Shown here: positions 1-64,000 of the stretch, in pieces | Numbering within the stretch: position 1 is the stretch's first letter | Layout: each line of letters opens with the position of its first letter | Source of the DNA: Bugula neritina | Taxonomy: Eukaryota > Animalia > Bryozoa | Direction: 5' to 3' | NCBI GenBank assembly: GCA_964035545.1 | Contig: OZ037770.1 | Span: forward strand, 4,806,662 to 4,870,661 | Length of the DNA: 64,000 nucleotides | Notes under the pieces: model-generated | What the model was told of the DNA's origin: nothing | The model's database searches: none | Seen by the model: the letters and a program-made list of their open reading frames with translations, nothing else | Position numbers and translations under genes: made by a program

Positions 1-1163
1 CGGAGCTGAAACAGGTTCCGGAAGTGGTGGCGTTAGACTTGGCGCTGGAGGTGGTGGGCGCACTTTTGGTAACGCAAGTGGCCTTTCCTGCCTCACCAAG
101 TCTTCTGCCCGCGGCATGATCACTTCATACTCTGGTTCAGGTCGCCGCCGCCCGCGCGTTGCTGTCTGCCTCCTGGGCTCTAACAACGGGGGAGCTTTTC
201 CTGCCGCACCTGGGCTAGTCCAATACGACTTCAAGCGAGCCTCATTTTAGATAGACACCTGTCCTGAGCGCTCAAACTTGTAGGTGTGATTGGGCATCAC
301 TTCAACTACCGCGTAGGGTCTCACGAACTTAGGCTGTAGCTTAGCCGCCTGTTCTCGATGCCTACGGCAGTTGACCATTCAGACCCAGTCTCCAACTTGG
401 TAGAGGGGTGGTTCTTCGGAGTCTTCTTTTTGCACTTGCCACTGCTTTTTCCGCAGTATTTCGTGTGCAACCTTCATTTGCTCTACCGATTTGCTGGCAT
501 ACCCAAATCCCAAACCCCAAATCCTGGGGGGGTAACCCAGTCTTCCACAGCTCGTACTCTTTCAGGATCAGTCGCCACGCCATGACGGCCGACGTGGTGC
601 CCCAGGTACTTCACCTCCAGCTGCAAGAGAGCGCTCTTGGAAGGTTTGAGCTTCAGGCCGGCACCTCTGAGTCATTCGAACATCTCCTGCATATGACTGA
701 CGTGTGTCTGGAAATCCGGGAAAATCACAATGACAACATCGAGGTAGACTAGCAGTGTCTCCCAGTGGAGCCCACTGAGGACCTGTTCCATGAGCCTCTG
801 AAACGTGGCGGGGGCGGAGGTCAACCCAAAGGGTAGTACTTTCCACTTCCACAGTCCGTTCCATGTGATGAACGCCGTCTTCTCCTGGGCGTCGGGAGTC
901 AGAGGGACCTGCCAATAACCGCTCAGCAAGTTTAGTGTGCTAAAGTACTTGCTGCCGGCCAGGGCGTCCAGAGATTCATCAATCCGAGGTAGAGGGTAGG
1001 CGTCCTGTATGCTTACGCTATTTAGTTTGCGGTAATCCACACAGAACCACCAACTGCCGTTTTTCTTCCGGACCAGGACGACCGGCGAGCTCCACGCACT
1101 ATGTGCTGGCTCTATGAGGCCGCGGTCCAAAAGATCCCGGACTTGTCGGCTGACCTCCTTTTC
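1..1163 (-). mobile_element. Ty3/Gypsy LTR retrotransposon remnant (RT fragment joined to integrase C-terminal region), inside an intron of LRR-ROCO-caspase copy A
   Basis: ORF 672-1130 carries RT motifs (WSSPVVLVRKK, CVDYRKLN, DAYPLPRID, LPFGLTSAPATFQ) with decayed YLDV. Bases 1-500 match 57657-58163 and ~520-1130 match ~59890-60480 of the element in copy B, so there is an internal deletion. Confidence 0.93.
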
Positions 1164-2356: not shown

Positions 2357-4359
2357 AATACAGAGATTAAAGAAGTTACAGAAACTCACAATTTCAGAGA
2401 ATAATTTCACCAGTCTACCTTCTTCAGTATGTGCATTGATTAATCTGCACACACTGGATATATCCAGCAACAGATCCATGACATCTTTGAACCCTGAGAT
2501 ACTACAGCTAACACATCTTGGATCCTTCGATACAGATGGATGTGATGCTCTTACATCTCCTCCACAAGAAGTCTGTGAGAGAGGACTGGAGTCTGTGCGA
2601 CAATACTACACAGACTTGGCTAAAGGTGCAGGTAGAAATCTTCCATTTGCTACAATAGTGGTGTTGGGGAACACCATGGCAGGTAAAACCAGCCTAATCA
2701 GAACATTACAGAGCACTGACAGGAAGAGAGTTCTGACTGACAGAAGTCCTAATGCAGAGCATGATGAGACCACAAAGGTGTTTAATGTGGAAGAGGTGGA
2801 AGTGAATGGTACAACTCTTCGTCTCATAGATATGGGAGGCCAAGAGGTCTACCATATCACATACCATTTGACACTAAGACAGAATTGTGTACCAGTAGTT
2901 GTAGTCAACATGGAGCAGTATGATCAGATTTCGAAAATGTCTACAGACAGAGAGGCTGTGAGAAAGTTGGCCTTTGACTTCATGTCTCACCTCTATCTCG
3001 CTCATCCATTTCTTGGCCCACCTAAGCTTGTCTTCACACACAAAGATAAGTTTCCGAGTGAAGTTTTTCAACAGCTTCGAAGAAATCTTCTTGAAGTGTC
3101 TGAGCAGTTTTGCAAAAATATTCTTGAAGAAGAGAAAGGTTTAGAAGGTGACTTTGCTCGAATTCAACATTTCACTCAATCAAACGGAAAAGTGTTCTCC
3201 GACGACAACATATATGAAGTTGGAAAATTTGACGAGTACAAGATATTTGAATCGATTAAAAAATCTCTTCTTCAAAGTTGCCGACACTTTATCAAACCCC
3301 TTCCAAAAGTCTGGGAGGATGTCAACACAAAAGTGTTGTCCTTGCAGTCCGCACACAATACCTTTGATGAAATCCTGGCAGAGATGAAGAAAGAACGGAA
3401 TGATATTGATAGAAACCAATTGGATACCATCATCATGTACATGCATGATTGTGGAAAAGTTCTCTGGTATAAGAATGTTGATGCACTCAGGCCATACATA
3501 TTTCACAAGATTACAGAAGTTACCAAACTGCTGTGTGTCTTGTATCACCATGATCCAAACATCTGGCAGAGCAGAGTAGATCAGTTCAAACCATATTTTT
3601 CAAGAGGAGTGAGAATTGAGAAGCAGGACTTTGAAGAGTCTGTGAACTACTTCCAAGCAACTGGCCTAATGATGCAATCCCTTCTTGAATATCTGATAGC
3701 TCAGGAAACTTTATTTAGAAATCCGGGTGATGTTGAAATTGGGCTTTGTTTGCTCAGCACGTTCCGTTTGTTGTATGGCCCTAGGAATGATGAATCCTAT
3801 GATTCCTACTTCATAATCCCTCAGTTTGCCAAAGAATCTTACAGCCTCTCCTACACTCAACAAAAGGAGTTACTGCTTCATACTGAGACTCAGTTTAATG
3901 GTCTGGCATTACCGCAGCATGTCTACCATCAAATGACTGTTGGTTTGTTAGAGATGTTTTCTAAAGAGTTTGCTACAATGCAAGTGAAGAGGAATGGTGC
4001 TAACGTCTACCAAGATGAAATATACACACAACTGGTACACGATTACGCATTGAGAAGAGTTTTACTCTACGTTTCATCTGATGCGTCCAACATTTCCAGA
4101 ATGTGGGAGAATCTCATTTCGGTCAACAACAACATCCTCAGACATGTTATGGAGACTTGGACTGCTAGTCGACCAGTCACTGCCTGCATTTGTGCTCACT
4201 GCTTGCTACTTGGGGTTTCCTGTCCTAAAAAACTCTTTCACCCCAAATGGTGTCTTCGATCCTTAAAAAACCTGCTGCCACCTAATGTCAAGAAGTGTGG
4301 TGGAGCTTCAAAGATGTTATGTAATGGAGAGGAGGTCCCTAGCGCTTTAATCCACCCAT
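2357..4359 (+). CDS. Large exon: terminal LRRs + ROC GTPase + COR domain (ROCO family, MFHAS1-like)
   Basis: 656-aa ORF 2436-4406. P-loop GxxxxGKT, G3 DxGGQ and G4 THxD as in ROCO proteins; LTSPPQEVCERGLESVRQY is the typical LRR-to-ROC linker. The acceptor at 2355-2356 is phase 2, matching the LRR cassette exons. Confidence 0.92.
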
Positions 4360-44418: not shown

Positions 44419-45090
44419 CACTAATATTCTACCTTACACTAATACTCTACCTTACACTAATATTCTACCTTACACTAATATTCTACCTTACACTAATATT
44501 CTACCTTACACTAATAGTCTACCTTACAATAATACTCTACCTTACGCTAATGGTCTACCTTACACTAATAGTCTACCTTGCACTAATATTCTACCTTACA
44601 CTAATATTCTACCTTACACTAATATTCTACCTTACACTAATATTCTACCTTACACTAATATTCTACCTTACACTAATATTCTACCTTACACTAATAGTCT
44701 ACCTTACACTAATAGTCTACCTTACACTAATATTCTACCTTACAATAATATTCTACCTTGCACTAATATTCTACCTTGCACTAATATTCTACCTTACACT
44801 ACTAGTCTACCTTGCACTAATAGTCTACCTTACACTACTAGTCTACCATACACTAATATTCTACCTTACACTAATATTCTACCTTGCACTAATATGCTAC
44901 CTTGCACTAATAGTCTACCTTACACTACTAGTCTACCATACACTAATAGTCTACCTTACACTAATATTCTACCTTACACTACTAGTCTACCTTACACTAA
45001 TAGTCTACCTTACACTAATATTCTACCTTACACTAATAGTTTACCTTGCACTAATATTCTACCTTGCACTAATAGTCTAGCTTACACTAA
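44419..45090. repeat. 18-bp minisatellite (cactaatattctacctta), about 37 units
   Basis: Direct reading; it accounts for the (LIFYLT)n and (LPYTNS)n ORFs. Confidence 0.95.
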
Positions 45091-45556: not shown

Positions 45557-48500
45557 ATGGGAATCTGGTTGAGACATTCTGGACAGCCTCCTGTAGACTG
45601 GTCAGATGTACAGTCTGCTAATACCAAGTCATATACTATTGCTGAGGTGAAACGTGAAGTTGGGAGTTATGATATCACAGATCTCAAACTAGAGGGAACA
45701 ATTCCAAGTAACATTGGAGAGATTGCTGGTAAAGCCATGTGTCTATGTGTTTCTAACCTGACTGACAGAGCAAGTCTAGACAAGTGAGTGTCTATTAAAT
45801 AGCTGTGTAAATGTTAAACAAGTTTATTTGTGTTATTTATTAAATAATAATGGATAATAGACACTGAAGCTGAGGCATATTTTTGCTCATAATATATGCG
45901 TACAACATAATATACATCAACATAGTAATATGTCCAAGAGAACCTGTCTCTACTGTTATTTGATAGTGTTGACTGAATGATGTTTCATGTATATATATAG
46001 CTAAAAACTGGAGTAATGTACAGTTTGTAATATATTATACAGAAGATTATGTTTTGTCATCAACTGCAAATTTACAATCCTAAACATTAGTCAATATAAT
46101 AACTTACATAGCAATTTAGAGTGAGGCCTCATGTACTATAAACTAACAGCTAACCTTGCATAATGAAGCTTCCTCTCCTCACTTACAACAGAATATAACT
46201 GAAACTCTTTGGTGTTTTTTGCAACAATATATCTGTTTCCTGCATGTTTTTTCTGTTAAATACGCAATTAGCATAATATAATAGTATATTTTATTTTGAT
46301 ATGGTAAACATAAATACATGACACACTTTATATTACAGTCTATGCCAGCTGACTCAGTTAGAGAAACTAGACATAGGATATAATCCTCTCAACACAGTAC
46401 CAGAAGTTGTGTCATCACTTACATCACTTGAGGAGTTAAATGTGGAAAACTGTAAAATAGCTACTCTACCTGAGAGGTTTCTGTGTCGCAGTCTTTTTTG
46501 TTTCAAACACTCAATGATTCACATGTTGATATAATGCTTACGAAGTATGGCGAATTAGTATGTCACTATGTATTGTTGAAAAGCATAAAGCTATAAATTA
46601 CAATTTTCTTGAAGCTATATGATATTAGAATTTTCTCAAAACTTGAAAATATTGTAAATATGTTTCAGTTATCTGGCATTACATTTTCATTGCTATAAAA
46701 CCTTGTTCAACAAATACTATAGCACCCACTTGTAGTTTACTAAAATCTAGTTCATGTTAAATGCTTTTTAGCTTTTGCTATTTTACTTTAAATTTGCTTT
46801 GTTGCAATAAATATGTTTCTTGGATATTTTACCTGATTGAATACACAAGTATCGTATATACAGTATATAATAATATCCTTATACAGTGGATTACATATAT
46901 TATGCACTTTATATTACAGTCTATGTCAGCTGACTCAGTTAGAGAAATTTAACATAGAAGGGAATTCTCTCCACACAGTACCAGAAGTTGTGTCATCACT
47001 CGCATCACTTAAAGAGTTGAATATGTGGGGCTGTGAATTATCTACTCTACCTGGGAGGTTTTGTATTGCACAATATTATCTCTGTTTCAAACATTCAATA
47101 TTTCACTTCTTTAATGCTTATCAAGTAGTGTTATGCTATTTTATTATATATTGCCAACGTATGTTAAAAAACCTATAGATATGCATTTTCGAACTTGTCC
47201 AATAGTTTGTCGCAAGGTGGAAATAATACAGCATTATGGTATGCTATTGTATATCCTTATATCACAAGAACCTTTTGTAATGAATAATAAAACAGCCATC
47301 TGCAGTTTACTGGCAATCATGGTAATAATCGAATCATTCTTAGCTTCTTGCGTCAATCACTTTGACTATCCATTACCGGAATGAATTTTTTTCTGAACTT
47401 TTTACCTGACTGACTGTGCTTAGCAATATAACATGTACAGTGTATATTATTATGACACAGTAGACTACATATATCATACCCTTTATAATTATTGCAGTCT
47501 ATGCCAGCTGACTCAGTTAGAGAAACTAATTTTAAGAGGAAATCCTCTCAACACAATACCAGAAGTTGTGTCATCGCTCACATCACTTAAGGAGTTGTAT
47601 ATGGGGAACTGTAAATTATCTACTCTACCTGAGAGGTTTGTGGAACACAGTCTTTCTTGTTTCAAACACTCAATAATTCACATGTTGATATAATGCTTAC
47701 CAAGTATTGCTAATTAGTATGTCACTATGTATAGTTGAAAAGCATAAAGCTATAAATTACAATTTTCTTGAGGCTATATTGTATTTGAGTTTCTCAAAAC
47801 TTGAAAATAAATATGTTTCAGTTTTCTGGCATTACATTTCCTATTGCCATAAAAAGTTCTTCAACAAATACTATAGCACCGCTTGTACTTTACTAGAATC
47901 TATTTCATATTAAATGTCTTTTACTTTAAATATGCCTTGTCAAAATAATTTTTTTTTGCATGTTATACCATATTGAATACACCACTGTAGTATACAGAGT
48001 ACATAATATTATCCTGATACAGTGGATTGCATATATTATGCACTTTATATTACAGTCTATGCCAGCTGACTCAGTTAGACAAACTAGACATAGGATGGAA
48101 TCCTCTCAACACAGTACCAGAAGTTGTGTCATCACTCACATCACTTAAAGAGTTGTATATGGGGAACTGTAAATTGTCTACTCTACCTGAGAGGTTTGTG
48201 GAGCACAGTCTTTCTTGTTTCAAACACTCAAAAATTCACATGTTGATATAATGCTTACCAAGTATTGCTAATTAGTATGTCACTATGTATTGTTGAAAAG
48301 CATAAAGCTATAAATTACAATTTTCTTGAGGCTATATTATAATATTAGATTTTCTGAAAACTTGAAAATAAATATGTTTCAGTTATCTGGCATCACATTT
48401 CCTATTACTATGAAACCTTCTCCAACAAATACTATAGCACTCGTTTGTAGATTACTAGAATCTATTTCACATTAAATGCTTATTAGGTTTCGGTATTTCA

Positions 48501-51500
48501 CTTTGAATTTGCTTTGTTGCAATAAATTTGTTTCTTGGATATTTTACTTGATTGAATACACAAGTAGTATATACTATTATCATGATACAGTGGATTAAAC
48601 ACATAACACACTTTATATTACAGTCTATGTCAGCTGACTCAGTTAGAGAAACTAGACATAGGAATGAATCCTCTCAACACAGTACCAGAAGTTGTGTCAT
48701 CACTCACATCACTTAAAGAGTTGTATATGGGGAACTGTAAATTGTCTACTCTACCTGAGAGGTTTGTGGAGCACAGTCTTTCTTGTTTCAAACACTCAAA
48801 AATTCACATGTTGATATAATGCTTACCAAGTATTGCTAATTAGTATGTCACTATGTATTGTTGAAAAGCATAAAGCTATAAATTACAATTTTCTTGAGGC
48901 TATATTATAATATTAGATTTTCTGAAAACTTGAAAATAAATATGTTTCAGTTATCTGGCATCACATTTCCTATTACTATGAAACCTTCTCCAACAAATAC
49001 TATAGCACTCGTTTGTAGATTACTAGAATCTATTTCACATTAAATGCTTATTAGGTTTCGGTATTTCACTTTGAATTTGCTTTGTTGCAATAAATTTGTT
49101 TCTTGGATATTTTACTTGATTGAATACACAAGTAGTATATACTATTATCATGATACAGTGGATTAAACACATAACACACTTTATATTACAGTCTATGTCA
49201 GCTGACTCAGTTAGAGAAACTAGACATAGGAATGAATCCTCTCAACACAGTACCAGAAGTTGTGTCATCACTCACATCACTTAAAGAGTTGTATATGGGG
49301 AACTGTAAATTGTCTACTCTACCTGAGAGGTTTGTGGAGCACAGTCTTTCTTGTTTCAAACACTCAAAAATTCACATGTTGATATAATGCTTACCAAGTA
49401 TTGCTAATTAGTATGTCACTATGTATTGTTGAAAAGCATAAAGCTATAAATTACAATTTTCTTGAGGCTATATTATAATATTAGATTTTCTGAAAACTTG
49501 AAAATAAATATGTTTCAGTTATCTGGCATCACATTTCCTATTACTATGAAACCTTCTCCAACAAATACTATAGCACTCGTTTGTAGATTACTAGAATCTA
49601 TTTCACATTAAATGCTTATTAGGTTTCGGTATTTCACTTTGAATTTGCTTTGTTGCAATAAATTTGTTTCTTGGATATTTTACTTGATTGAATACACAAG
49701 TAGTATATACTATTATCATGATACAGTGGATTAAACACATAACACACTTTATATTACAGTCTGTGTCAGCTGACTCAGTTAGAGGAACTATACATAGGAC
49801 ACAATCCTCTCAACACAGTACCAGAAGTTGTGTCATCACTCACATCACTTAAAGAGTTGAATATGTGGTACTGTGAATTATCTACTCTACCTGAGAGGTT
49901 TGTATTGCACAATATTATCTCTGTTTCAAACATTCAATATTTCACTTCTTTAATGCTTATCAAGTAGTGTTATGCTATTTTATTATATATTGCCAACGTA
50001 TGTTAAAAAACCTATAGATATGCATTTTCGAACTTGTCCAATAGTTTGTCCTAAGGTGGAAATAATACAGCCTCATGGTATGCCATTGTATATCCTTATA
50101 TCACAAGAACCTTTTGTAATGAATAATAAAACAGCCATCTGCAGTTTACTGGCAATCATGGTAATAATCGAATCTTTCTTAGCTTCTTGTATCAATCACT
50201 TTGACTATCCTTTACCGGAATGAATTTTTTTCTGAACTTTTTACCTGACTGACTGTGCTTAGCAATATAACATGTACAGTGTATATTATTATGACACAGT
50301 AGACTACATATATCATACCCTTTATAATTATTACAGTCTATGCCAGCTGACTCAGTTAGAGAAACTAAAGTTAAGAGGAAATCCTCTCAACACAATACCA
50401 GAAGTTGTGTCATCACTCACATCACTTAAAGAGTTGAATATGGGGAACTGTAAATTGTCTACTCTACCTGAGAGGTTTGTGGAGCACAGTCTTTCTTGTT
50501 TCAAACACTCAAAAATTCACATGTTGTTATAATGCTTACCAAGTATTGCTAATTAGTATGTCACTATGTATTGTTGAAAAGCACAAAGCTATAAATTACA
50601 TATTTCTTGAGGCTATATTGAATTAGAGTTTCTCATTACTTGAAAATAAATATGTTTCAGTTATCTGTCATTACATTTCCTATCGCTATAAAACTTTTTT
50701 AACAAATATTATAGCATCCACTTGTAGTTTACTATAGTGTGTATTTCTCATTAAATGGTTATTAGAGCCTTCTGTACTTTACTATGAATATGCCTTAGCG
50801 TAATAAATTTGCTATTTGGATATTTTACTTGATTGAATATGCAGTGTTTGTTATGATACAATAAATTAAATATATCACATACTTCTTATTACAGCCTGAG
50901 CCAGCTGACTCAGTTAGAGAAACTAGACATAGGATGGAATCCTCTCAACACAATACCAGAAGTTGTGTCATCACTTAAAGAGTTGGATATGGAAGGCTGT
51001 AAATTATCTACTCTACCTGAGAGGTTTGTGTGTCACTACAAATTTTATATCATTTTTAACGTTCAATAATTGTTATTTTGAAGCAGAATTTCAACACAGT
51101 AACTACTACATTAAGATGTTTATACTTTTTCTCTGCAAACCCCCATACGAATCTTAACGTTTCAGAGGATATTGTCAATTAGCACACTATCAGTTGTATA
51201 GTTGATTATTATTCACACACTGAGTATATATAATAATTGAATACTTGTATGCTATTATAATAAACTGTTAACTTCTCATGCTCTGCATGTAATATGCTAC
51301 AATAAGTTGCTTGGTTGTTAAATTGTATATAGTTTTACCTGGTTGAAAACAAAATGTGAATACAGTATAAAGTTTTATGGTAATGCAGACCACATATATA
51401 TCATACACTTTATATTACAGCCTGTGTCAGCTGACTCAGTTAGAGAAACTAAACATAGGAAGTAATCCTCTCAACACAGTACCAGAAGTTGTGTCATCAC

Positions 51501-54500
51501 TCACCTCACTTAAAGAGTTGGATATGTGGAACTGTAGATTATCTACTCTACCTCAGAGGTTTGTGTGTTACAATAATTATTTCTTTTGTTTTAAACATTC
51601 TATATTTCACTTCTTTAATGCTTCTCAAGTAGTGTTATGCTATGATATCATATATTGCCAACGTATGTTGAAAAACATAAACATGTATTTTTTTAACTTA
51701 TCTAGTTGTTTGTCCTAATGTAGAAATAATACAATTTTATAGTGAGCCATTGTATATCCTTACATCACAATACTTTTTGTAATCAAAAATAAAGCAGGCC
51801 TCTGCAGTTTACTGACAATCATGGTAATAATCGAATCTTTCTTAGCTTCTTGCGTCAAGCACTTTGACTATCCATTACCGGAATGAATTTTTTTTCTGCA
51901 TTTCTTACTTGGCTGACTGTGCTTAGCAATATAATATGTACAGTGTATATTATTATGACACAGGAGACTACATATATCATACCCTTTATAATTATTGCAG
52001 TCTATGCCAGCTGACTCAGTTAGAGAAACTAGACATAGTAGATAATCCTCTCAACACAGTACCAGAAGTTGTGTCATCGCTCACATCACTTAAAGAGTTG
52101 GATATGAGGATCTGTGAATTATCTACTCTACCTGAGAGGTTTGTGGAACACAGTCTTTCTTGTTTCAAACATTCAATAATTCACATGTTGATATAATGGT
52201 TACCAAGTATTGCTAATTAGTATGTCACTATGTATAGTTGAAAAGCATAAAGCTATAAATTACAATTTTCTTGAGGCTATATTGTATTTGAGTTTCTCAA
52301 AACTTGAAAATAAATATGTTTCAGTTTTCTGGCATTACATTTCCTATTGCCATAAAAAGTTCTTCAACAAATACTATAGCACCGCTTGTACTTTACTAGA
52401 ATCTATTTCAGATTAAATGTCTTTTACTTTAAATATGCCTTGTCAAAATAAATTTTTTTTGCATGTTATACCATATTGAATACACCACTGTAGTATACAC
52501 AGTACATAATATTATCCTGATACAGTGGATTGCATATATTATGCACTTTATATTACAGTCTATGTCAGTTGACTCAGTTAGAGAAACTAGACATAAGAAG
52601 AAATCCTCTCAACACAGTACCAGAAGTTGTGTTATCACTCACCTCACTTAAAGAGTTGTATATGTGGAACTGTGGTTTATCTACTCTACCTCAGAGGTTT
52701 GTGTGTTACAATAATTATTTCTTTTGTTTTAAACATTCTATATTTCACTTCTTTAATGCTTATCAAGTAGTGTTATGCTATGATATCATATATTGCCAAC
52801 GTATGTTGAAAAACATAAACATGTATTTTTTTAACTTATCTAGTTGTTTGTCCTAATGTAGAAATAATACAATTTTATAGTGAGCCATTGTATATCCTTA
52901 TATCACAGAACTTTTTGTAATCAAAAATAAAGCAGCCCTCTGCAGTTTACTGACAATCATGGTAATAATCGAATCTTTCTTAGCTTCTTGCGTCAAGCAC
53001 TTTGACTATCCATTACCGGAATGAATTTCTTTTCTGAACTTTTTACCTGGTTGACTGTGCTTAGCAATATAATATGTACAGTGTATATTATTATGACACA
53101 GGAGACTACATATATCATACCCTTTATAATTATTGCAGTCTATGCCAGCTGACTCAGTTAGAGAAACTACACATAGACGGAAATCCTCTCAACACAGTAC
53201 CAGAAGTTGTGACATCACTCACATCGCTTAAAGAGTTGGATATAAAGAGCTGTGAATTATCTACTCTACCTGAGAGGTTTGTGGAACACAGTCTTTTTTT
53301 TTAGTTTCAAATGTTCAATAATTCACATTTTGATATAATGCTTACCAAGTATTGGGAATTAGTATGTCACTATGTATTGTTGAAAAGCATAAAGTTATAA
53401 ATTACATATTTCTTGAGGCTATATTGAATTAGAGTTTCTCATTACTTGAAAATAAATATGTTTCAGTTATCTGTCATTACATTTCCTATCGCTATAAAAC
53501 TTTTTTAACAAATATTATAGCATCCACTTGTAGTTTACTATAGTGTGTATTTCTCATTAAATGGTTATTAGAGCCTTCTGTACTTTACTATGGATATCCC
53601 TTAGCGTAATAAATTTGCTATTTGGATATTTTACTTGATTGAATATGCAGTGTTTGTTATGATACAATAAATTAAATATATCACATACTTCTTATTACAG
53701 CCTGAGCCAGCTGACTAAGTTAGAGAAACTATACATAGGAGGGAATCCTCTCAACACAGTACCAGAAGTTGTGTCATCACTCACATCACTTAAAGAGTTG
53801 AATATGCAGAGCTGTGAATTATCTACTCTACCTGAGAGGTTTGTGTGCCACAACAAGTTTTATATATCACTTTTAACATTCAATAATTGTTATTTTGAAG
53901 CAGAATTTCAACACAGTAAATACTACATTAAGATGTTTATACTTTTTCTCTGCAAAAACTACATATGAATCTCACCGTTTCTGAGGATATTGTCAATTAG
54001 CACACTATCTAGAAGTTTCCTCTGCTTCACAAGTTATTTTATAGTGTTTCTATTTCTTTTTGAATATCTCCCATGATAGGTTGACTGGGCTGTTTTTCAG
54101 AAATCGTTTTAATAACTATTTTTGTTATATTATAATTATAGCTACTTCTGTACACATAATTAGCATATATATTACATTATTATAGTATCACAGTTTCTTT
54201 TTACTGTCTAATTGAATGCACAAGTGCTATATACAGTATCTACATAATATTATCCTGATACAGTGGATAACATATATCATGCACTTTATATTACAGTCTA
54301 TGTCAGCTGACTCAGTTAGAGAAACTATACTTAGGAGATAATCCTCTCAAGACAGTACCAGAAGTTGTGTCATCACTCACATCACTTAAAGAGTTGAATA
54401 TGTGGAGGTGTGAATTATCTAATCTACCTGAAAGGTTTGTGGAACACAGTCCTTCTTGTTTCAAACACTCAATAATTCACATGTTTTTATAATGCTTACC

Positions 54501-57500
54501 AAGTATTGTTAATTAGTTTGACAATATGTAGTGTTGAAAAGCATAAAGCTATAAATTACAATTTTTTTGAGGCTATATGATATTAGAGTTTCTGAACACT
54601 TGAAAATAAATATGTTTCAGTTATTAGGCATTACATTTCCTATTGCTCTATAACCTTCTTTAAATAATACTATAACACCTACTTGTGGTTTACTAGAATC
54701 TATTCCCCATTACATGCTTATTAGCTTTCGGTAGTTTACTTTGAATTTGCTTTGTTGAATTAAATTTTTTTCTGAACTTTTTACCTGACTGACTGTGCTT
54801 AGCAATATAACATGTACAGTGTATATTATTATGACACAGTAGACTACATATATCATACCCTTTATAATTATTACAGTCTATGCCAGCTGACTCAGTTAGA
54901 GAAACTAAAGTTAAGAGGAAATCCTCTCAACACAATACCAGAAGTTGTGTCATCACTCACATCACTTGAAGAGTTGAATGTGGAGAAATGTGAATTATCT
55001 AATCTACCTGAGAGGTTTGTGTGTCACTACAAATTGTACATCATTTTTAACGTTCAATAGTTATTATTTTGTAGCAGAATTTCAGCACAGTAAATACTAC
55101 ATTAAGATGTTTATACTTTTTCTCTGCAAACCTCCATATGAATCTCGCCTTTACAGAGGAGATTGTCAATTAGCACACTATCTAGAAGATTCCCGACGTC
55201 ACAAATAAGTTTATAGTATTCCAATATCTTTTTTGAAATGCTTCCCATGAGAGGTTGACTAGGCTTTTCTTAAGAAATTGTTTTATCAAACCTTTTCATT
55301 ATATTATAATGATTGTTACTTCTGTACCCATAATTGGTATATATTGTAGTAATTTTAGTAATTACTAGTTTTGTGGGCTTCTAGCGAGCAATATCTTTAT
55401 ATTATCTTCCAATAATATCACGGCTTGTAACAGGAATGAATGATTTATTAATACGCAGTAAAAGTAGTAGCGAAACGATACATCCAATATCAAGGGTAAA
55501 AATATACATCTATCTTACACTAACTAGCTATCACACTCTGAGTATGGCTGCTATCTACATCCGGCGCCCTCCGCGCATTGCTGGGGGTCTCATGTGACGG
55601 ATATCGGATTGGCTGGGGAGCACGTGGGATAACATACTACACTCCCCACTACACTGCCCCCCACCCCAGCAGGAAGCCCACCATCCTGATAATACCAAAA
55701 TAAAAAAATAAAATAACAACAAAAAAACAATAAGATATCTGCATCAAAAGATCAAAATTTATACTTAGGCCAACGGTTTATTAAAAAAAAACATCTGGTT
55801 AAAATATAAAAATTAGGCACTATAAAACTAAGAGATTGTATCTGTATCAAGAGCTTTTTGTACGGCACCGAGAGATATGATGTGTAGAGAGACGGTAAGT
55901 GAGGCACCACCTGCGGCGTAGATCAGGAGGACAGCTGGAAAGAGTTAGGGACAGGGAAATAGAGAGGGGAAGGAGAACGTCATCTACGACACTGGGGTTG
56001 TCACAAAGACGGGTGTCTGGGCAATGTGGAAGGTAGACACTCAGTCTTTATCATCTCTCTTGAGCTGGGCCACAGAGTCCCGGAGAGCCTTGAGTTCAGA
56101 AGCGGCGGCTGATATCCTAGACGCCAACCTCTCTCTCTCTAGTTCATGCATCCGTTGCTCCATCTCTCTTAGATTTCTAGCAACAGAGGAGTGGCGTTTG
56201 GGGATGAAGACTGCCATCGCCACTTACGAGAGGGTCGAGGGAGACAGGTGAGGACGGGCATCATCTCTGGGGGACTTCTATCCGTTGTAAGACTACTCGG
56301 AGTACGATGTTGGGACGGGGCGCAGTGTGAGCGGGGGTGACAGGCGAGGTACCAGGGGCTTCCTAAGCCCAGGGGGTTTGGGGCAGGGTCCTTGGGTAAT
56401 GGCACGGGGAGCGGGAAATTCTTGGCTCAGCCGTTCGTAACGAGCAGGGTCTGAGATGAATGGCTTGATGAGGCCGAGAAAAGTAGGGAAGGAAAGCTTG
56501 TCCACATTGTAGAGATGTCCAACGTGACACTCCATAGTCTTCTGGTGACGGAGGGTGTAGTCCCTGTGGTAGCTGTACTCCCCACAGGGGCGGAAGGTGG
56601 TGATAAAATGTTGATGGATGTGTACTCGGAGGCGGCGAGGTGTGGTGAAATGCTGTTGACACAGCCGGCAGGTGGTGCAGTTGTCGTTTCCTCTATTTTG
56701 TTGAATCATGTTCTCGCTACCCTGGGTAACCCAGCTAGACCGGGTTATGAGTATCTCCGGTAGTGTAGCGGAAGTAGGTTCCGTCTCCCAAGCCATCTCC
56801 AATGGTGGCATATCATCATAGTTAGAACAGCGAGTGATATCTGAAAAAGCAGAATTATTGTTAGATCAAATTTGATCTTTACAGCATAATTCTGATGACA
56901 ATCGACTGTTACTAGTCTGAGAGTCATGCATCTTTTTGTACGGCACTCGAGAGACTGTGTTTGGACGTGTAGACTGGCTGAGAAACATAGTGTCAAGTTC
57001 CAGATCTAGTAGATCATCGGCCATTGTTATGTCCTCGTCGTCTTTCACGTTTAGCCCAGTCTCCAGCAATTGTGATTCAACCAGAGTGATAAAATCAGAA
57101 TTAACTGATGTCAGACCCGTTTCCATAGATAGGAATACTAGGGCTAGGCAGGCTTACTTTGGAACTTGGTATTTGGAATCATACTCAACGTTCAAGCTTG
57201 GATTTTAGTGGTTTTAGTATGTCTACCTTTGGTGATGTCAGCGTAAAAAAAGACTGGACAGCGTGTTTATTTCGCATGACTAGAACTGTTTGCCTCGGGC
57301 GCAATAATTCCACCTAATACTCCGCCCTCGCAAAAGTTGATATTTTCGCGGTGTTCACAACTTCCTTCGTTTCGCTACCAGTCTCTCAGTACCGCACCCA
57401 GCTTGGCCTTCATGTCTGCCGCTTGTAACGCAGTCGCATACGAAGTCTCAAATATACTAGGGGTTGCCTAGTACGTTGTCCACTTTCCAAGGGAAGTGGT

Positions 57501-60500
57501 GTACTAATTGGGGGAGATGGTGTAGTCACTGCTCGTGGCGGTGTACTCACTGGTGGACTGTTATGTTCCATCGGTGGCGTTTCCGGCCTACTATTGACTG
57601 CTGTATTATTTTCAAGATTTCCGGATACAGCCCTCCCCCGGGGGGTTTTGCAATTCCGGAGCTGAAACAGGTTCCGGAAGTGGTGGCGTTAGACTTGGCG
57701 CTGGGGGTGGTGGGCGCACTTCTGGTAACGGAAGTGGTCCTTCCTGCCTCACCAAGTCTTCTGCCCGCGGCATGACCACTTCATACTCTGGTTCATGTCG
57801 CCGCCGCCCACGTGTTGCTGTCTGCCTCCTGGGCTCTAACAACCGGGGGGGGGAGGGTTCTCCTGCCGCACCTGGGCTAGCCCAATACAGCTTCAAGCGA
57901 GCCTCATTCTGAATAGACACCTGTCCTGAGCGCTCAAGCTTGTAGGTGTGATTGGGCATCACTTCAACTACCGCGTAGGGTCCCACGAACTTAGGCTGTA
58001 GCTTAGCCGCCTGTCCTTGACGCCTACGGTAGTTGACCATCCACACCCAGTCTCTAACTTTGTAGAAGGGGGGTTCCTCGGAGTCTTCTTTTCGCACCTG
58101 CCACTGAATTTCCCGTAGTATTGTGTGTGCGACCTTCATTTGCTTTACCAATTTGCTGACATACTCGTGGATGGAGTAGTCCTGCTCAGGAATGTGGTAG
58201 GTGAGGTCATCTGGCACCCTAGTCTTTTGAACGAGCATCAGGAGGTTAGGGGTCTCACCAGTACTGGTGTGCGGTGTGTTACGATAGGCCCGCAAGACTT
58301 GCGGCAACACCGTATCCTATTCCTTCTGACTCCGGCTGAGGAGAAGACTGTGGAGTGCATCGCCCAGCATCCGGTTGTTGCGCTCCACCACTCCGTTTTC
58401 CTGGGGGTAGTATGGAGTGGTCCTGCTTTAATTTACTCCTCAGAGGCAGCAAAGATCGCTCATCAGCTGAGACTAAAATTGAGCCCCCTGGTCCGAATGT
58501 ATATGCTCAGGCAAGCCAAAATAGCAGAATACATGTTGGTCCAGCACCCTGGCCACTGTTGGAGCGGACGCATCTGGGATAGCCAGAGCGTCTGCCTACC
58601 TAGTGAAGTGGTCGGTTAATACTAGGATCCAACTGTTTCCTCTGGAGGTTAGGGGCATGGGTCCGACCAGGTTGACAGCCACCACTTGCCACGGCCTTCC
58701 AGCATATAGCCTCCACCGTCCCGCTTCACCAAGGAGACGACCATGCTTGCTGGCCTGGCAGATTTCGCACTGTCTTACTCTGATTCGTACATCACGCTCC
58801 ATGCTAGGCCAGTACCACCGAAGTTGTAATTTGGTCTGCACCCTCTGGACTCCTGCGTGAGCCTGTTTGTGGGTGTTCCATACTAACTCCCGGCGGATAG
58901 CAGCTGGGCAGACTACCCTCTTCTTCTCGGGGTGTCTGTTGCTTGCGGCCAATGTCATGGTCAGCAGATAATCCGGCCCGATCCGCAGGGAGTTCCAACG
59001 TTAACAATACAGCCGTAATTCGGCGCTTCTCTGCCTCAGCTTTTCTTCATTGGGTCGTCGCCCCTCCTTCTTGGCTTGGTACACGTCGGCTACCACTCCC
59101 AGAGGGTTTCCCTGGAGTTTCCGTAGCTCCCTAACGTTACTGGCCAAGACAGGGTTGGCGCGGAGGTTTTGTACTACCTTCGGAGGCGTACCTGCCTTCT
59201 GTTGGAGTTGACCCTGGTCCCAGTCATACTCTATCTCAGGGTGGTCCAGTGCCGTCAACTAGGACCGCAGGGGACTTCCATCCCTCTTCTCAATGTTGAG
59301 ACACTGCCTACACCCTTCGTCTGGTCGCCGGCTCAGTCCGTCTGCATTGCCGTGCTTCTTACCGGGTCGATGTTTGATCCGGTAAAATAACTCGGCCAGG
59401 ACCTCGAGCCATCTCGCGACCTGGCTAGACAGTTCTGCTCTCTCGCACAACCAAATCACAGAGGTGTGGTCCGTACGCAGCCGGAACTTCTGGCCGTATA
59501 GATAAGGTCTAAAGGTCTTCACTGACTTGATTAATGCCAGCAGTTTCTTGCGGGTAGTGCAGAAATGTCGTTCAGTGGGTGAGAGAGACTTGCTGTAGTA
59601 GGCTACTACTACTTCACTACGTTCCTGCACTTGCGACAGCACAGCGCCAACATTCTGGTCACTGGCGTCCGTGTCTAGGATATACTCCAGAGCGAAGTTT
59701 GGGTAGGCCAAGATAGGAGCCTCCAGCAGACGGCCCTTGAGGCAGTCGAACGCCCTCTGTTTGACGGAAGTCCACTTCCAGGTCACCCCCTTTGCGGTGA
59801 GCCGATTTAACGGCTGTGCCACCCCTGCAAAGTCTGGTATGTATTGCCTGTAATACCCTACCAGCCCCAGGAAAGCCTGAAGTCCGGTCAAATCGGGGGG
59901 GTAACCCAGTTTTCCACAGCTCGTACTTTTTCAGGATCAGTCGCCACGTAATGACGGCCGACGATGTGCCCCAGGTACCTCACCTCCGGCTGCAAGAGAG
60001 CGCACTTGGAGGGTTTGAGCTTCAGGTTGGCACCTCTGAGTCGTTCAAACACCTCCCGCAGACAACTGACGTGTGTCTGGAAGTCTGGGGAGATCACGAT
60101 GACTTCATTGAGGTAGAGTAGCAGTGTCTTCCAGTGGAGCCCACTGAGGACCTGTTCCATGAGCCTCTGAAATGTGGCAGGGGCGGAGGTCAACCCAAAG
60201 GGTAGTACTTTCCACTTCCACAATCCGTCCCGTGTGAGAAACACCGCCTTCTCCTGGGCGTCGGGACTCAGAGGGACCTGCCAACAACCGCTCAGCAAGT
60301 TTAGTGTACTAAAGTACTTGCTGCCGGCCAGGGCGTCCAGAGATTCATCAATCCGGGGTAAAGGATAGGCGTCCTGTATGGTTACGCTATTTAGTTTGCG
60401 GTAGTCCACGCGGAACCGCCAACTGCCGTCTTTCTTCTGGACCAGGACAACCGGCGAGCTTAATTCACTATGTGCTGGCTCCTTCTCTTTTTCCGGCCCC

Positions 60501-63500
60501 AACCTCCTCATGGGTTGCCAGGTAGGGAGAGTCCCCGCAGCCAACGGTATCTCATGACAGACAGCTCTAGTCAGGCCCAAGTCATGATCTCCGCTGCTGA
60601 ACACTTCGTTGTACTCGCATAGCAACTTGGCCATAGCCTGTCGCTCCCCGTTGCTCGCGCAGCTATCACAGGACGACTTGTACAACTCTTGGACATGTAG
60701 CGGGACGGTCCCCCGCCCTGGAGACGGGCGCTGTTGGGGACCTTCCGTCGCATCTCCCAGCGACGGCCCTATATCCTTTTCCTGAACAGAATGGAAACGG
60801 TCCAGTACGGACCCTGATGGTAGCTTTACCGCTTCTGAGAAGGGGTTGACACACTGTATCAAGATTTCTCCTCATTCAGTCAGCCGGTTAAGACTACTGG
60901 CGAGTTGGAATCTTGCGAGCGCGCCTTCGACAACTCCCAACCCAGAGATCTGGCTACTGTTTACTCTACAGTAAATGGTAGCCCGGGTACGGCCTGGTAT
61001 TGTACAGTTCCGTATTACCTGCACGCCTCCCACTAGGGGACGGCCAGACTTGTCGACACAAGTGAGCTCCTTGCCGGCCATCAGTATAGCTGACTTGTTA
61101 AAGTCAATGCGGCAACCATGTCGCTTCAAGAATGGCATCCCTAGTATAGCATCCTCCTCGAGTTGGCTGATGACGAAGGTTTCCTGGGTGGCCTGGTCGC
61201 GAACGCGCCCAGTCAGCTCTATTATACCGTAGAATGGGATCCGCGACCCGTCTGCAAGGGTGCCAGGTTCCCCGGTATAGGAAGCTAATTCTCTCCTCTC
61301 CTTAGAGGGAAGAGCGTCAAAGACCCGACGGCTGAGGAGATTCGTGGTACACCCGGAGTCTAACAAGAAAGTGACAGACCTGCCGGCCACCTTCCTGGTA
61401 AGAAATAGCTGTCTCCATGTGGTTGTACCCTTACTCCCCCAGCGTGCTCGGTCTCGGCCTGGTGGGGCAGTGCCCGTTTCGCCCGCGGTTTTCGGGGCCT
61501 CTTAGGGCGAGGTTTTCTCCGCGGAGGGGCGATTAGTTCCCCTCCGATGTCCGGATGGACCTTGCCAGCCGGCTCCATCTCTGGTAGCCAGCTGAAGCGG
61601 TTAGCGAGAGGCAGTGTGAATGGTTCCAGTCGCCCCTCTGGTCAACTGGTCCAACGGGGTGCCTGCCACTCGTGGGGGGTATACCGCGCTGTCCGTACGA
61701 ACGCCCTGCGGTATCCACCTCGTGGTTCCTTCATTCTCGGCCTGCGGGGTTTGGAGGCGTCCGCGAGCCGTTGAAGTTTAATCGTTTCCCATATAGTGGG
61801 CAACTCGAGCAGAGATTTCCTCGTGTGCCGCATCTTCAACATAAAGCAGCTGGCCTCAGAACCTCTACCCTCGGCCTCAAAGGTCCTTGGGTGGGTTCTG
61901 TGGGGTTGGCACGGGCTAGGATCGCCACCAACTGTTCTAACATGGCTATCATGCGGTCCACCTCCGCTTCAAGAGGAAGGGTGGTGGTGGCGGCAGCCAC
62001 TTGGACTGGATGGTCCGGTCCCGAAGTGATTTGTTGGGAACTCACTTTAGCTCGGTAGAATTGTTTGGCCAAGATATAGGCCTCACCTTCATGCAGTGCA
62101 TTCTCTATCGTAGTCACCCCTCTTGCATGAAGCTGGTGGTGGAAACCCAAATCATTGAGGGACTGTACAAAGGCGTCATAGGTGTAGTGTTCCCGGTGTG
62201 TTTCTGGCAAGTTGCTGTATGCGATCTGTGCCAGTCTCTTCACTAGGGTAGCATGATCCTGTAGTGGTGTGCGCGCTTCTTAGTGCAACCTTTGTAAACG
62301 GGCCCTGGCGTCCACAGCGGAGATGCCGAAACGGGCCCGCAGCGCAGCAAAGATCCCGTTTACACTGGATCCCAGTCCGTACGACTTCGCTTGCTTCATC
62401 AGCGCCGTCCGTAGTTGAATCAGGGGTACTCGTGGTGGCCATCGAGTGATGGCCATGACTTCGTTGAATTCTCGAATAAATTGTTCAACATCTTGTAGGC
62501 CCGTAACATACTACACTTCCCACTACAACATTATATATTTTTATAGTAACACAGTTTCTTATTATTGTCTAATAAGTAAGAAAACTACTTTCTTATATTT
62601 ATAATGACATCACATTGCAACATAATTGACTCAATCAACCGTATTGTGTAAAGCTCATTAGTAAAAAGTCACTTAGTAGATTATATAGTATGTTTGATTT
62701 AGGTAATTCAAGTTTTACTTTTAATTATTTTGAAATAAAAGATCTGCTTTTATATTGTAAACCGAAGATGACAAAAAAAATTATTAAATATTGCAACTTT
62801 TTTTTTCATGCTCTCCTTTGGTTATTTATCTCCAATTCTCAGTGTAATAGAAGCCAATTTTTATCTTATTCCTGTTCTCAAACAGCCTGTTAATATATTG
62901 TTTCATAATTAATTTACAATTCTAAATTACGAATCAACTGGCCTTTAAAGGTGCAACATGTTCCTGCAAGCCGATGACTTTCCAGAATTGTATTCTCTCA
63001 TAGTGAAATAATTCACAACTTCTATTTCCTGTCTAGAAACTATAATACATTTATTAGGGTAATTAGTGAGAGGTTGTGGCAGAAGTATTTTATTTTACTT
63101 GAAATTACTTTAATGCTTTGCGTAGATGTTTCAGAGCTGTACTGTGTTCCTATTTGATGATAAATTGCATGTATTATGGCACATAAAACAATATTCCTTA
63201 TAATGATAACATCCATATAGTAGAATATCAGTGTGAACAGTTACTCAGTGATCAGAAGTGTCAGAAGTATTTTATTTTCACTTCACATTACTTTAATGCC
63301 TTATGCAGATGCCACAGAGCTGTAGCCTACCGTGTTCCTATTTGCTGATAACTGTGTTGTGGCACATACTAGGAATTTTCTACTCTGTGGTATAAAATAT
63401 TATTCCTTCTGGTAGAATACCAGTGTGAACAGTTACTCAGTTATCTGCCATATAAAAAAAGATGATAGTATTACATGTAGGTTGTTTTTTTATGACAGTA

Positions 63501-64000
63501 CTTAGTACAAATGTAGCACTTTTTTTACCAAATATATACTTACAATTATACTGTTATATTATATATCTTTATAAAATAGTTAAAATGTTATGAATCATAT
63601 ATAATATGATACTCGTACATAATTGTAACTTAGACATACTTGTTTTCTTTCCTTAATTAATGTACTAATTCAAGGTATTGTATATAAACTTGTTATAGTA
63701 ACTGCAACTTAGTACTATATTATGTGTAATTATTGTTATACTAATATTGGGTATCTTTATGAAAACTATTATATCAATTACCTGTATAGCTAGGTCTAAT
63801 AATAGAAATCTTATATATTAATAGAATACAGAGATTAAAGAAGTTACAGAAACTCACAATTTCAGAGAATAACTTCACCAGTCTACCTTCTTCAGTGTGT
63901 GCATTGAGTAATCTGCACACATTGGATATAGGCAGCAACAGATCCATGACAGCCTTGAACCCTGAGATACTACAGCTAACACATCTTGAGTTCTTCTATA
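45557..64000 (+). CDS. LRR-ROC-COR(-caspase) gene, copy B, 5' part: first coding exon 45557-45783, 16 LRR exons 46339-55014, then LRR/ROC exon from 63825 running off the window
   Basis: ATG exon (MGIWLRHSG...LKLEGTIPSNIGEIAG...SLD) ends in phase 2. All LRR exons are phase 2/2. The exon at 63825 begins in phase 2 and nearly duplicates 2357-2530 (IQRLKKLQKLTISENNFTSLPSSVCAL). Confidence 0.87.
46339..55014 (+). repeat. Array of 16 LRR cassette exons (two 23-aa LRRs each) starting at 46339, 46920, 47498, 48056, 48624, 49192, 49760, 50337, 50895 (129 bp), 51421, 52001, 52559, 53139, 53701, 54297 and 54877
   Basis: Each is flanked by (a/g)cag and gttt. Consensus LCQLTQLEKLxIxxNPLNTVPEVVSSLTSLKELxMxxCxLSTLPER; no stops or frameshifts in any exon; period ~525-595 bp. 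Confidence 0.95.
55345..55653 (-). repeat. 3' LTR (TGTAG...CTACA) with adjacent polypurine tract
   Basis: Inverted termini; its right end matches 62504-62527; a C-rich tract follows at 55656-55668. Confidence 0.85.
56041..56811 (-). pseudogene. Extra ORF (C2H2-like zinc finger, Pro-rich linker, coiled coil) between pol and 3' LTR
   Basis: TCRLCQQHFTTPRRLRVHIHQHFITTFRPCGEYSYHRDYTLRHQKTMEC and NLREMEQRMHELERERLASRISAAASELKALRDSVAQLKR. Confidence 0.7.
62655..64000 (+). repeat. Paralogue of 1165-2530 (intron + LRR/ROC exon start), offset ~61.5 kb
   Basis: Colinear near-identity from tcattagtaaaaa.tcacttagtag to gctaacacatcttg. Confidence 0.95.

What the first reader, a model, noticed from the sequence alone, without database searches (positions are those of the whole stretch)
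45557..63830. Every LRR exon is phase 2/2, so any subset splices in frame: possible combinatorial isoform repertoire
Seen: the first exon ends AA|gt, each cassette is 138 bp (one is 129 bp through an in-frame 9-bp loss at 50895-51023), and the ROC exon starts in phase 2. All 16 cassettes are open with intact splice sites. Inference: exon skipping or mutually exclusive splicing (Dscam-like), or germline or somatic deletion between the repeated introns, could produce many receptors from one gene. The simple alternative is one constitutive 32-LRR solenoid.
Basis: inference. Interest (0 to 1): 0.8.

Follow-up and report, generated by a model that had tools for sequence, protein, structure and literature searches.

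The report
Sixteen in-phase LRR exon cassettes
A moss-animal (bryozoan) gene for a leucine-rich-repeat/GTPase/caspase protein holds 16 tandem copies of one 138-base exon that all keep the reading frame; tandem exon duplication has to give exactly this, and nothing yet shows that the copies are mixed and matched by splicing.

Summary
Exon 1 (45557-45785) ends AA|GTGAGT. Sixteen cassettes follow (fifteen of 138 bp, one of 129 bp). All are open, with a TTACAG/TTGCAG acceptor, an AG|GTTTGT donor and phase 2/2. The Roc exon starts in phase 2 at 63825.

The inference does not follow from this. An array made by tandem duplication of one exon inside a working gene has to be phase-symmetric. The same module is seen 168 times in 16 stretches of this genome. 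Of these, 166 are exactly 138 bp and open.

Paralogous genes carry about 7 to 18 cassettes, so length diversity is written in the germline, gene by gene. Seven codons per cassette are hypervariable.

None of the four known devices that enforce mutually exclusive splicing is present. Introns are about 400 nt. All sites are of one GT-AG type. Double inclusion stays in frame. Docking/selector complementarity is no better than chance.

Occasional NLRP3-like exon skipping stays open. The donors are weak and silent sites are constrained.

Most likely this is one long constitutive LRR solenoid in a large LRR-Roc-COR-caspase family. The scan has already reported this family on other DNA of this genome.

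The parts
45557..45785 (+). Exon 1: start codon plus 76 codons, ends AA|GTGAGT (phase 2). No Pfam match.
   Evidence: The same 76-codon frame sits upstream of 8 paralogous arrays at 71-88% identity. It also occurs in 26 metagenome ORFs.
46339..46476 (+). LRR cassette 1 (138 bp, two 23-residue LRRs, phase 2/2)
   Evidence: Pfam LRR_4 E=1.5e-7 and LRR_8.
46920..47057 (+). LRR cassette 2 (138 bp)
47498..47635 (+). LRR cassette 3 (138 bp)
48056..48193 (+). LRR cassette 4 (138 bp); first of three 568-bp units with identical introns
48624..48761 (+). LRR cassette 5 (138 bp), identical to cassette 6
49192..49329 (+). LRR cassette 6 (138 bp)
49760..49897 (+). LRR cassette 7 (138 bp)
50337..50474 (+). 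LRR cassette 8 (138 bp)
50895..51023 (+). LRR cassette 9 (129 bp: three codons missing in the second LRR, still phase 2/2)
51421..51558 (+). LRR cassette 10 (138 bp)
52001..52138 (+). LRR cassette 11 (138 bp)
52559..52696 (+). LRR cassette 12 (138 bp)
53139..53276 (+). LRR cassette 13 (138 bp)
53701..53838 (+). LRR cassette 14 (138 bp)
54297..54434 (+). LRR cassette 15 (138 bp)
54877..55014 (+). LRR cassette 16 (138 bp), last of the array
55015..63824 (+). Last intron of the array (8.8 kb), enlarged by a retroelement
55500..62500 (-). G+C-rich, decayed Ty3/gypsy-type retroelement. Protease, RT, RNase H and integrase lie in several broken frames on the minus strand. No LTR pair was found. Borders are approximate.
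63825..64000 (+). Start of the large exon (phase 2). About three more LRRs, then Roc GTPase and COR beyond the window end (L004:486 to about 2496). Caspase exons follow (L004 about 3466-3674 and 3917-4136).

Best explanation
The stretch is the 5' half of one gene of a large bryozoan family. The family encodes, in one polypeptide, an LRR solenoid, a Roc-COR GTPase and a caspase.

The sixteen cassettes are sixteen tandem duplicates of a single exon-plus-intron unit of about 570 bp. Each exon holds two complete 23-residue LRRs. A duplicated exon survives in a working gene only if its length is divisible by three, and every copy inherits the phase of its parent. The uniform 2/2 phase is therefore the footprint of how the array grew, not a sign of a splicing programme.

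The default product, inferred, includes all sixteen cassettes in order. That gives 32 LRRs plus about three in the next exon. The solenoid's concave face carries seven fast-changing residues per cassette. Presumably it is the sensing arm, and it controls the GTPase switch and the caspase.

Receptor diversity is made in the germline in three ways. There are many paralogous genes. Unequal recombination within and between arrays changes cassette number and shuffles cassettes in frame. The ligand-facing codons are under diversifying selection.

Shown here: exon structure, phase, family-wide conservation, copy-number differences between paralogues, the hypervariable codons and the domain content. 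Inferred: splicing at these sites, constitutive inclusion and the sensing function.
For: - Structure and phase.
- One common origin of the units: the repeat finder families with a 558-596 bp period and alignment of 109 units.
- The same module elsewhere: 132 cassettes in 12 stretches of contig C6 at 4.48-5.24 Mb and 36 more in distant clusters. Of these, 166 are exactly 138 bp, all but one are open, and all have AG...GT. No decayed cassettes hide in the array gaps.
- The layout exon 1 / N cassettes / Roc exon recurs, with N of about 7 to 18.
- Selection acts on every cassette. Framework columns are 95-99% uniform and intron columns 65-88%. Seven codons are hypervariable. Units whose introns are 96-98% identical have exons only 88-92% identical.
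- Domains: LRR_4, LRR_8, Roc (31.7 bits, cut-off 27), weak COR-A and Peptidase_C14.
- The closest named relatives are Watersipora subatra 'MFHAS1 homolog' proteins. Their annotated models join 4, 2 or 1 cassettes of 47 residues in series, with the joint at the same place (...LPE-R|L...).
- No device for mutually exclusive choice was found.
Against: - No RNA evidence of any kind was obtained for this gene, so even the splice sites are predictions. They rest on conservation and on the homologue's annotation.
- All cassette donors are AG|GTTTGT, with T at +3 and +4. The other four donors of the gene have a purine at +3: GTGAGT, GTATGT, GTATGA, GTAATC.
- Silent third positions of framework codons are about 92% identical between cassettes whatever the intron identity, which ranges from 50% to 95%. 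Weak sites plus constrained silent sites are what alternatively used exons often show, though exon-limited gene conversion would give the same picture.
- A solenoid of about 35 LRRs is unusually long.
- A 7-kb retroelement sits in the last intron.
Confidence: 0.65

Rival explanations
1. Stochastic or regulated skipping of single cassettes or runs of cassettes (NLRP3-like) makes a set of shorter in-frame isoforms beside the full-length mRNA. One gene would then give sensors with different surfaces.
For: - Every skip is in frame and restores a Ser codon.
- Paralogues with 7 to 18 cassettes show that many lengths are viable.
- Donors are uniformly weak, GTTTGT.
- Silent sites in the exons are far more conserved than the introns, as expected if dense exonic splicing signals are needed.
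- There is precedent: LRR exon modularity as a precondition for alternative splicing, and human NLRP3 lacking exon 5 (PMC6642158).
Against: - There are no RNA data.
- The features named are also explained by common descent of the donors and by gene conversion.
- The two closest Watersipora entries carry no isoform label; this is weak evidence.
- In mouse and pig, NLRP3 has the same exon modularity and no detected LRR splicing, so modularity alone predicts little.
Confidence: 0.2
2. Dscam-like mutually exclusive choice: each mRNA takes one cassette, or a fixed few, out of sixteen.
For: A tandem array of similar, same-phase exons with variable residues on a binding surface looks superficially like Dscam1 exon clusters.
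Against: - Introns of 397-458 nt exclude steric hindrance.
- All sites are one GT-AG type.
- 138 = 3 x 46, so joint inclusion is in frame and not removed by nonsense-mediated decay.
- No intron block is conserved above background.
- No k-mer of the flanking introns has its complement in the array introns more often than in Markov controls (all fractions 0.08 or higher).
- The inverted-repeat scan gives only A+T-rich 71-89% matches.
- Each cassette is an additive solenoid unit, not an alternative version of one domain.
- The Watersipora models join such cassettes in series.
Confidence: 0.03
3. Somatic DNA rearrangement (deletion, duplication or conversion between the repeated units) gives different arrays in different cells or zooids. 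This would be loosely like lamprey VLR assembly.
For: Long, nearly identical direct repeats are good substrates for recombination: three units have identical introns, and several pairs are 96-98% identical. Germline rearrangement has plainly happened often.
Against: - Nothing here bears on somatic cells.
- The germline gene is complete, ordered and has full splice signals. This is unlike a VLR germline gene, whose cassettes lie outside an incomplete gene.
- One assembly shows one array.
Confidence: 0.03
4. The copy is silent or dying: a young duplicate with a retroelement in its last intron, whose intact frames only reflect its youth.
For: A 7-kb retroelement lies in the last intron. No transcript is on record. 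The family is large and turns over quickly, and one paralogue has a frameshifted cassette.
Against: - All 16 cassettes, exon 1, the 671-codon Roc-COR exon and the caspase exons examined are open.
- Remnants of the same element, 90% identical, lie in the same intron of the upstream paralogue. The insertion is therefore older than that duplication, and both genes have stayed intact since.
- Exons differ from each other mainly at the seven selected codons.
Confidence: 0.07

Closest known systems
Exonic modularity of NLR LRR domains, e.g. human NLRP3 (Hoss et al. 2019, PMC6642158)
   Same: Each exon has a fixed length and encodes exactly two LRRs. The exon border sits at the same place in every repeat. 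The frame is kept if an exon is left out. The protein is an intracellular sensor with a nucleotide switch and death/inflammation signalling.
   Different: The exons are 138 bp with two 23-residue LRRs, not 171 bp with 28+29. There are 16 exons instead of about 9. The switch is Roc-COR rather than NACHT. A caspase is fused in cis. Skipping has been shown by RNA for NLRP3 and not for this gene.
Zebrafish NLR-B30.2 family (Howe et al. 2016, PMC4852459)
   Same: A large clustered family of innate-sensor-like genes. LRRs lie on separate exons, and their number differs between paralogues (0-6, or more than 20). Gene conversion and exon shuffling occur between members.
   Different: There the LRRs are reported as not particularly variable, and the B30.2 domain is the variable part. 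Here the LRR concave face is the hypervariable part, and the domain set is Roc-COR-caspase.
MFHAS1/MASL1-type Roco proteins; Watersipora subatra 'MFHAS1 homolog' (P0040, P0043, P0052)
   Same: LRR followed by Roc and COR. The bryozoan homologues also carry tandem two-LRR cassettes, and P0043 and P0052 carry a caspase domain.
   Different: Identity in the Roc-COR exon is only 31-33%. The Watersipora cassettes have 47 residues and number 1-4. Vertebrate MFHAS1 has no caspase.
Drosophila Dscam1 mutually exclusive exon clusters
   Same: Tandem arrays of similar, same-phase exons that vary at a recognition surface.
   Different: The devices that enforce choice of one exon are absent here. The cassettes are additive repeats, not alternatives for one domain half.
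Lamprey/hagfish VLR genes
   Same: LRR cassettes with a conserved framework and variable concave-face residues. Receptor length varies by the number of LRR modules.
   Different: VLR diversity is made by somatic copying of flanking cassettes into an incomplete germline gene. Here the germline gene is complete and each cassette is an ordinary exon with splice signals.

Membership tests
Roco proteins (LRR-Roc-COR) | Roc (Ras of complex) GTPase domain | tested here: met
   Pfam PF08477 Roc, 31.7 bits against a cut-off of 27, at residues 100-191 of the exon that starts at 63825. A P-loop G-x4-GKT/S is present.
Roco proteins (LRR-Roc-COR) | COR domain directly after Roc | tested here: inconclusive
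   PF16095 COR-A at residues 316-382, 22.9 bits, below the cut-off of 35.3. Homologues of the same exon carry precomputed COR-A hits.
Roco proteins (LRR-Roc-COR) | LRRs N-terminal to Roc | tested here: met
   LRR_4 and LRR_8 match the cassette and the start of the Roc exon.
Modular LRR-exon genes (NLR/RI type, PMC6642158) | Every LRR exon has the same length, holds whole repeats, has its border at the same repeat position, and has symmetric phase | tested here: met
   Fifteen of 138 bp and one of 129 bp, all phase 2/2. 166 of 168 family members are exactly 138 bp.
Modular LRR-exon genes (NLR/RI type, PMC6642158) | LRR exons actually skipped in mRNA | not testable with these tools
No spliced product is on record.
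Dscam-type mutually exclusive exon cluster | A device that prevents neighbouring variants from being joined: steric hindrance, incompatible spliceosomes, frameshift on double inclusion, or docking/selector RNA pairing | tested here: not met
   Introns are 397-458 nt. All sites are GT-AG with one consensus. 138 is divisible by 3. Complementarity is not above Markov controls, and only weak A+T-rich inverted repeats are found. No conserved intron block exists.
Dscam-type mutually exclusive exon cluster | Variants are alternative versions of one structural element | tested here: not met
   Each cassette is two complete LRRs. The Watersipora models join 2 and 4 of them in series.
VLR-type somatic LRR assembly | Incomplete germline gene, with donor cassettes lying outside it and lacking splice signals | tested here: not met
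   The cassettes lie in order between exon 1 and the Roc exon, each with an acceptor and a donor.
VLR-type somatic LRR assembly | Array differs between somatic cells | not testable with these tools
   Only one assembly is available and no reads could be laid.

The most novel reading that the evidence does not exclude
The sixteen cassettes are used combinatorially. Weak uniform donors and dense exonic signals let each cell or zooid include a different in-frame subset. One LRR-Roc-COR-caspase gene would then yield hundreds of sensor surfaces. This would be a splicing-based receptor repertoire in a lophotrochozoan, multiplied by about 70 paralogous genes.
Probability: 0.07. Interest if true: 0.8.

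Novelty: new member of a known kind. Interest (0 to 1): 0.35.

Why it matters
If the cassettes were really mixed by splicing, a colonial invertebrate would have a Dscam-scale repertoire of intracellular LRR sensors wired directly to a caspase. That would bear on how animals without antibodies diversify recognition.

As it stands, the phase symmetry only shows how the array grew. Strictly modular LRR exons are already known from NLR, ribonuclease-inhibitor and Slit genes.

Two things make the locus worth attention. One is its germline dynamics: fast in-frame gain, loss and shuffling of cassettes, with diversifying selection on seven codons per cassette. The other is the unusual one-piece LRR-GTPase-caspase design. 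The scan has already reported both on other members of the family. A single long-read cDNA experiment would settle the open question.

Tried and rejected
The decisive test is therefore missing.

2. Spliced products in the protein collection.
- The Roc-COR exon found only unspliced genomic ORFs from JGI metagenomes, plus distant Watersipora proteins.
- Exon 1 found 26 JGI ORFs. Nearly all stop at the same genomic stop just past the donor, and none is joined to a cassette.
- A search with the cassette region of the Watersipora protein was swamped by unrelated LRR proteins. It showed no isoform-labelled bryozoan entries.

3. Other individuals. The search for related loci with exon 1 in metagenome contigs confirmed nothing. 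One JGI contig carrying an exon-1 relative ends 730 nt after it, before any array.

4. Docking/selector test. I replaced it with a k-mer complement test against Markov controls.

5. LTRs of the retroelement. No direct repeat of 80 nt or more was found.

6. Joined model. Exons were searched one by one by reference. Lengths of the joined product are arithmetic only.

7. Alternative donors. Donors 6 nt downstream (GTGT...) exist in only some cassettes. I rejected them as the common site.
Full report
**Where and what.** The window is contig C6:4806662-4870661 of a 216-Mb assembly. Earlier notes of this scan call the organism a bryozoan, and one names Bugula neritina. My own support for this is limited. 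The only named relatives of the downstream exon are Watersipora subatra proteins.

**Checking the observation.**
- A repeat scan of 44-64 kb finds 16 copies of a unit spaced 526-596 bp apart between 46.3 and 55.2 kb.
- Reading the sequence and scanning for AG...GT-bounded open frames gives sixteen exons. Fifteen are 138 bp. One, at 50895-51023, is 129 bp and lacks three codons.
- Each exon has a ttacag or ttgcag acceptor, one leading base, an open frame, and the trailing bases AG before gtttgt (one gttttg, one gtttct).
- Exon 1 begins at the ATG at 45557 and ends AA|gtgagt at 45785.
- The next exon begins at 63825 with one leading base, so it too is in phase 2.
- The joints read Asn (AA+T), Ser (AG+T/C) and Arg (AG+A).
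- One qualification: the 176 bases of the 63825 exon inside the window encode more LRRs. Roc and COR follow beyond the window end (L004:486 to about 2496). Caspase exons come after that.

**The gene.**
- Pfam gives LRR_4 and LRR_8 for a cassette.
- For the big exon it gives Roc above its cut-off and COR-A below it. For a later exon it gives Peptidase_C14.
- Exon 1 has no family match. It recurs upstream of eight paralogous arrays and in 26 metagenome ORFs.
- A G+C-rich stretch at about 55.5-62.5 kb in the last intron encodes protease, RT, RNase H and integrase in broken frames on the minus strand. It has no LTR pair. It is a decayed gypsy-type retroelement.
- Pieces 90% identical to this element lie at 1-1112 of the window. 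That is the same intron of the upstream paralogue. The insertion is therefore older than that gene duplication, and both genes have stayed open since.

**Is the phase symmetry informative?** The sixteen units align with each other and with 93 units from paralogues, so they descend from one exon-plus-intron unit. A tandem copy of an exon inherits its parent's phases. It is tolerated in a working gene only if its length is divisible by three. Uniform 2/2 phase is thus the expected residue of growth by tandem duplication. It is a precondition for in-frame skipping, not evidence of it.

The family shows this on a large scale.
- In twelve stretches of C6 between 4.48 and 5.24 Mb I found 132 cassettes. 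Of these, 130 are exactly 138 bp and open. One is the 129-bp cassette here. One is a 139-bp frameshifted copy at C6:5042276-5042414.
- In four distant clusters with diverged introns, 36 more cassettes are all 138 bp and open, with the same AG|GTTTGT donor.
- The array gaps hide no decayed cassettes.

**Where the diversity is.**
- The layout exon 1 / N cassettes / Roc exon recurs. N is 7, 14, 7, 15, 16, 14, 18 and 8. Two further loci hold 3+15 and 10+2 cassettes, each split by a gap. One locus was only partly fetched and has at least 3.
- Arrays contain repeated blocks. Here, three units have identical introns. In other paralogues, blocks of 3 and 5 units are repeated.
- Germline gain and loss of cassettes is therefore frequent. 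But it makes new genes over generations, not many receptors from one gene.
- Within the cassette, seven codons are hypervariable: the x positions of LxLxxN/C in both repeats, which are the predicted concave face. The commonest residue there reaches only 22-45%, while framework residues reach 82-100%.
- Units whose introns are 96-98% identical have exons only 88-92% identical. The ligand-face codons therefore change several times faster than the intron.
- Earlier follow-ups on other members of the family reached the same reading. I verified it here independently.

**Tests of the splicing hypotheses.** Four devices are known to enforce mutually exclusive choice (established knowledge of Dscam1 and other clusters). 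None is present.
- Steric hindrance: the introns are 397-458 nt, far too long.
- Incompatible spliceosomes: all sites share one GT-AG consensus.
- Frameshift on double inclusion: it stays in frame.
- Docking/selector pairing, tested in two ways. The inverted-repeat scan gives only A+T-rich pairs of 18-29 nt at 71-89% complementarity. No 9- to 14-mer of the intron after exon 1, or of the unique parts of the last intron, has its complement in more array introns than Markov-1 controls (fraction of controls reaching the observed value 0.08-1.0).

In addition, no 10-nt bin of the intron exceeds 88% column uniformity, against 95-99% for the exon framework. The annotated Watersipora homologues join four, two or one 47-residue cassettes in series, with the joint at the same place. 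The Dscam-like version is therefore unlikely.

**What keeps exon skipping open.** Simple skipping cannot be excluded.
- All cassette donors have T at +3 and +4. The gene's other donors are GTGAGT, GTATGT, GTATGA and GTAATC.
- Third positions of framework codons are about 92% identical between cassettes, whether their introns are 50% or 95% identical.
- Weak sites and constrained silent sites are common in alternatively used exons. Inheritance of the donor from one ancestor, together with exon-limited gene conversion, explains both features equally well.
- In the best-studied parallel, NLRP3, the LRR exons are equally modular in human, mouse and pig. LRR splicing was seen only in human (PMC6642158). 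Modularity alone predicts little.

**What could not be done.**
No RNA or independent DNA reads were examined.
- The protein collection holds no spliced product of this gene or its close paralogues.
- The metagenome scan confirmed nothing.

**Mechanism proposed.** Shown: a complete, open gene with exon 1, 16 two-LRR exons, an LRR-Roc-COR exon and caspase exons. Inferred: all cassettes are included. That gives about 35 LRRs whose variable concave face binds a ligand. Binding acts through the Roc-COR switch on the fused caspase. I put constitutive inclusion as the main product at about 0.65, appreciable skipping at about 0.2, and mutually exclusive choice, somatic rearrangement and a silent gene together at about 0.13.

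**Comparison and novelty.** In-phase, fixed-length LRR exons, and paralogues with different numbers of LRR exons, are known from NLR genes (PMC6642158; PMC4852459). This array is a further and unusually long example, in a Roco-caspase family. The scan has already described that family on other DNA of this genome. The specific claim of this finding, a combinatorial isoform repertoire, remains an untested possibility.

Noticed in passing
window 46339-55014 and paralogous arrays on C6: Units with 96-98% identical introns (2/7, 3/11, 8/13, 10/12) have exons only 88-92% identical. The differences sit in seven codons on the predicted concave face. Framework third codon positions stay about 92% identical whatever the intron identity. 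This points to diversifying selection on a few codons, plus nucleotide-level constraint or exon-limited gene conversion on the rest.
   Followed up: partly
G000:C6:5042276-5042414 (L019:2276-2414): This is the only broken cassette among the 168 examined. It is 139 bp with a one-base insertion, and its acceptor and donor are intact. It is the 17th of 18 in a paralogue. That gene is either dying or must skip this exon.
   Followed up: no
window 55500-62500 (minus strand) and window 1-1112: A decayed gypsy-type retroelement lies in the last intron. Remnants 90% identical to it lie in the same intron of the upstream paralogue, so the insertion predates that gene duplication. A related element, 65-77% identical, lies at about 11.6-14.7 kb of the window.
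   Followed up: partly
window 44419-45090: An 18-bp minisatellite (37 copies, 92% matches) sits about 470 bp upstream of the exon-1 start codon. Its role is unknown. I did not check whether paralogues share it.
   Followed up: no
window 46476-55014, every cassette donor: All cassette donors are AG|GTTTGT (T at +3 and +4). This holds family-wide, including clusters with diverged introns. The gene's other donors have a purine at +3.
   Followed up: partly
window 47441-47497, 50280-50336, 51944-52000, 53082-53138, 54820-54876: In the units with a 'ttgcag/ttacag' acceptor preceded by 'gtacag', the 57 nt upstream of the exon are also open in frame behind a second AG. In units 2, 4 and 12, 33 nt are open in the same way. 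These may be chance or possible alternative acceptors.
   Followed up: no
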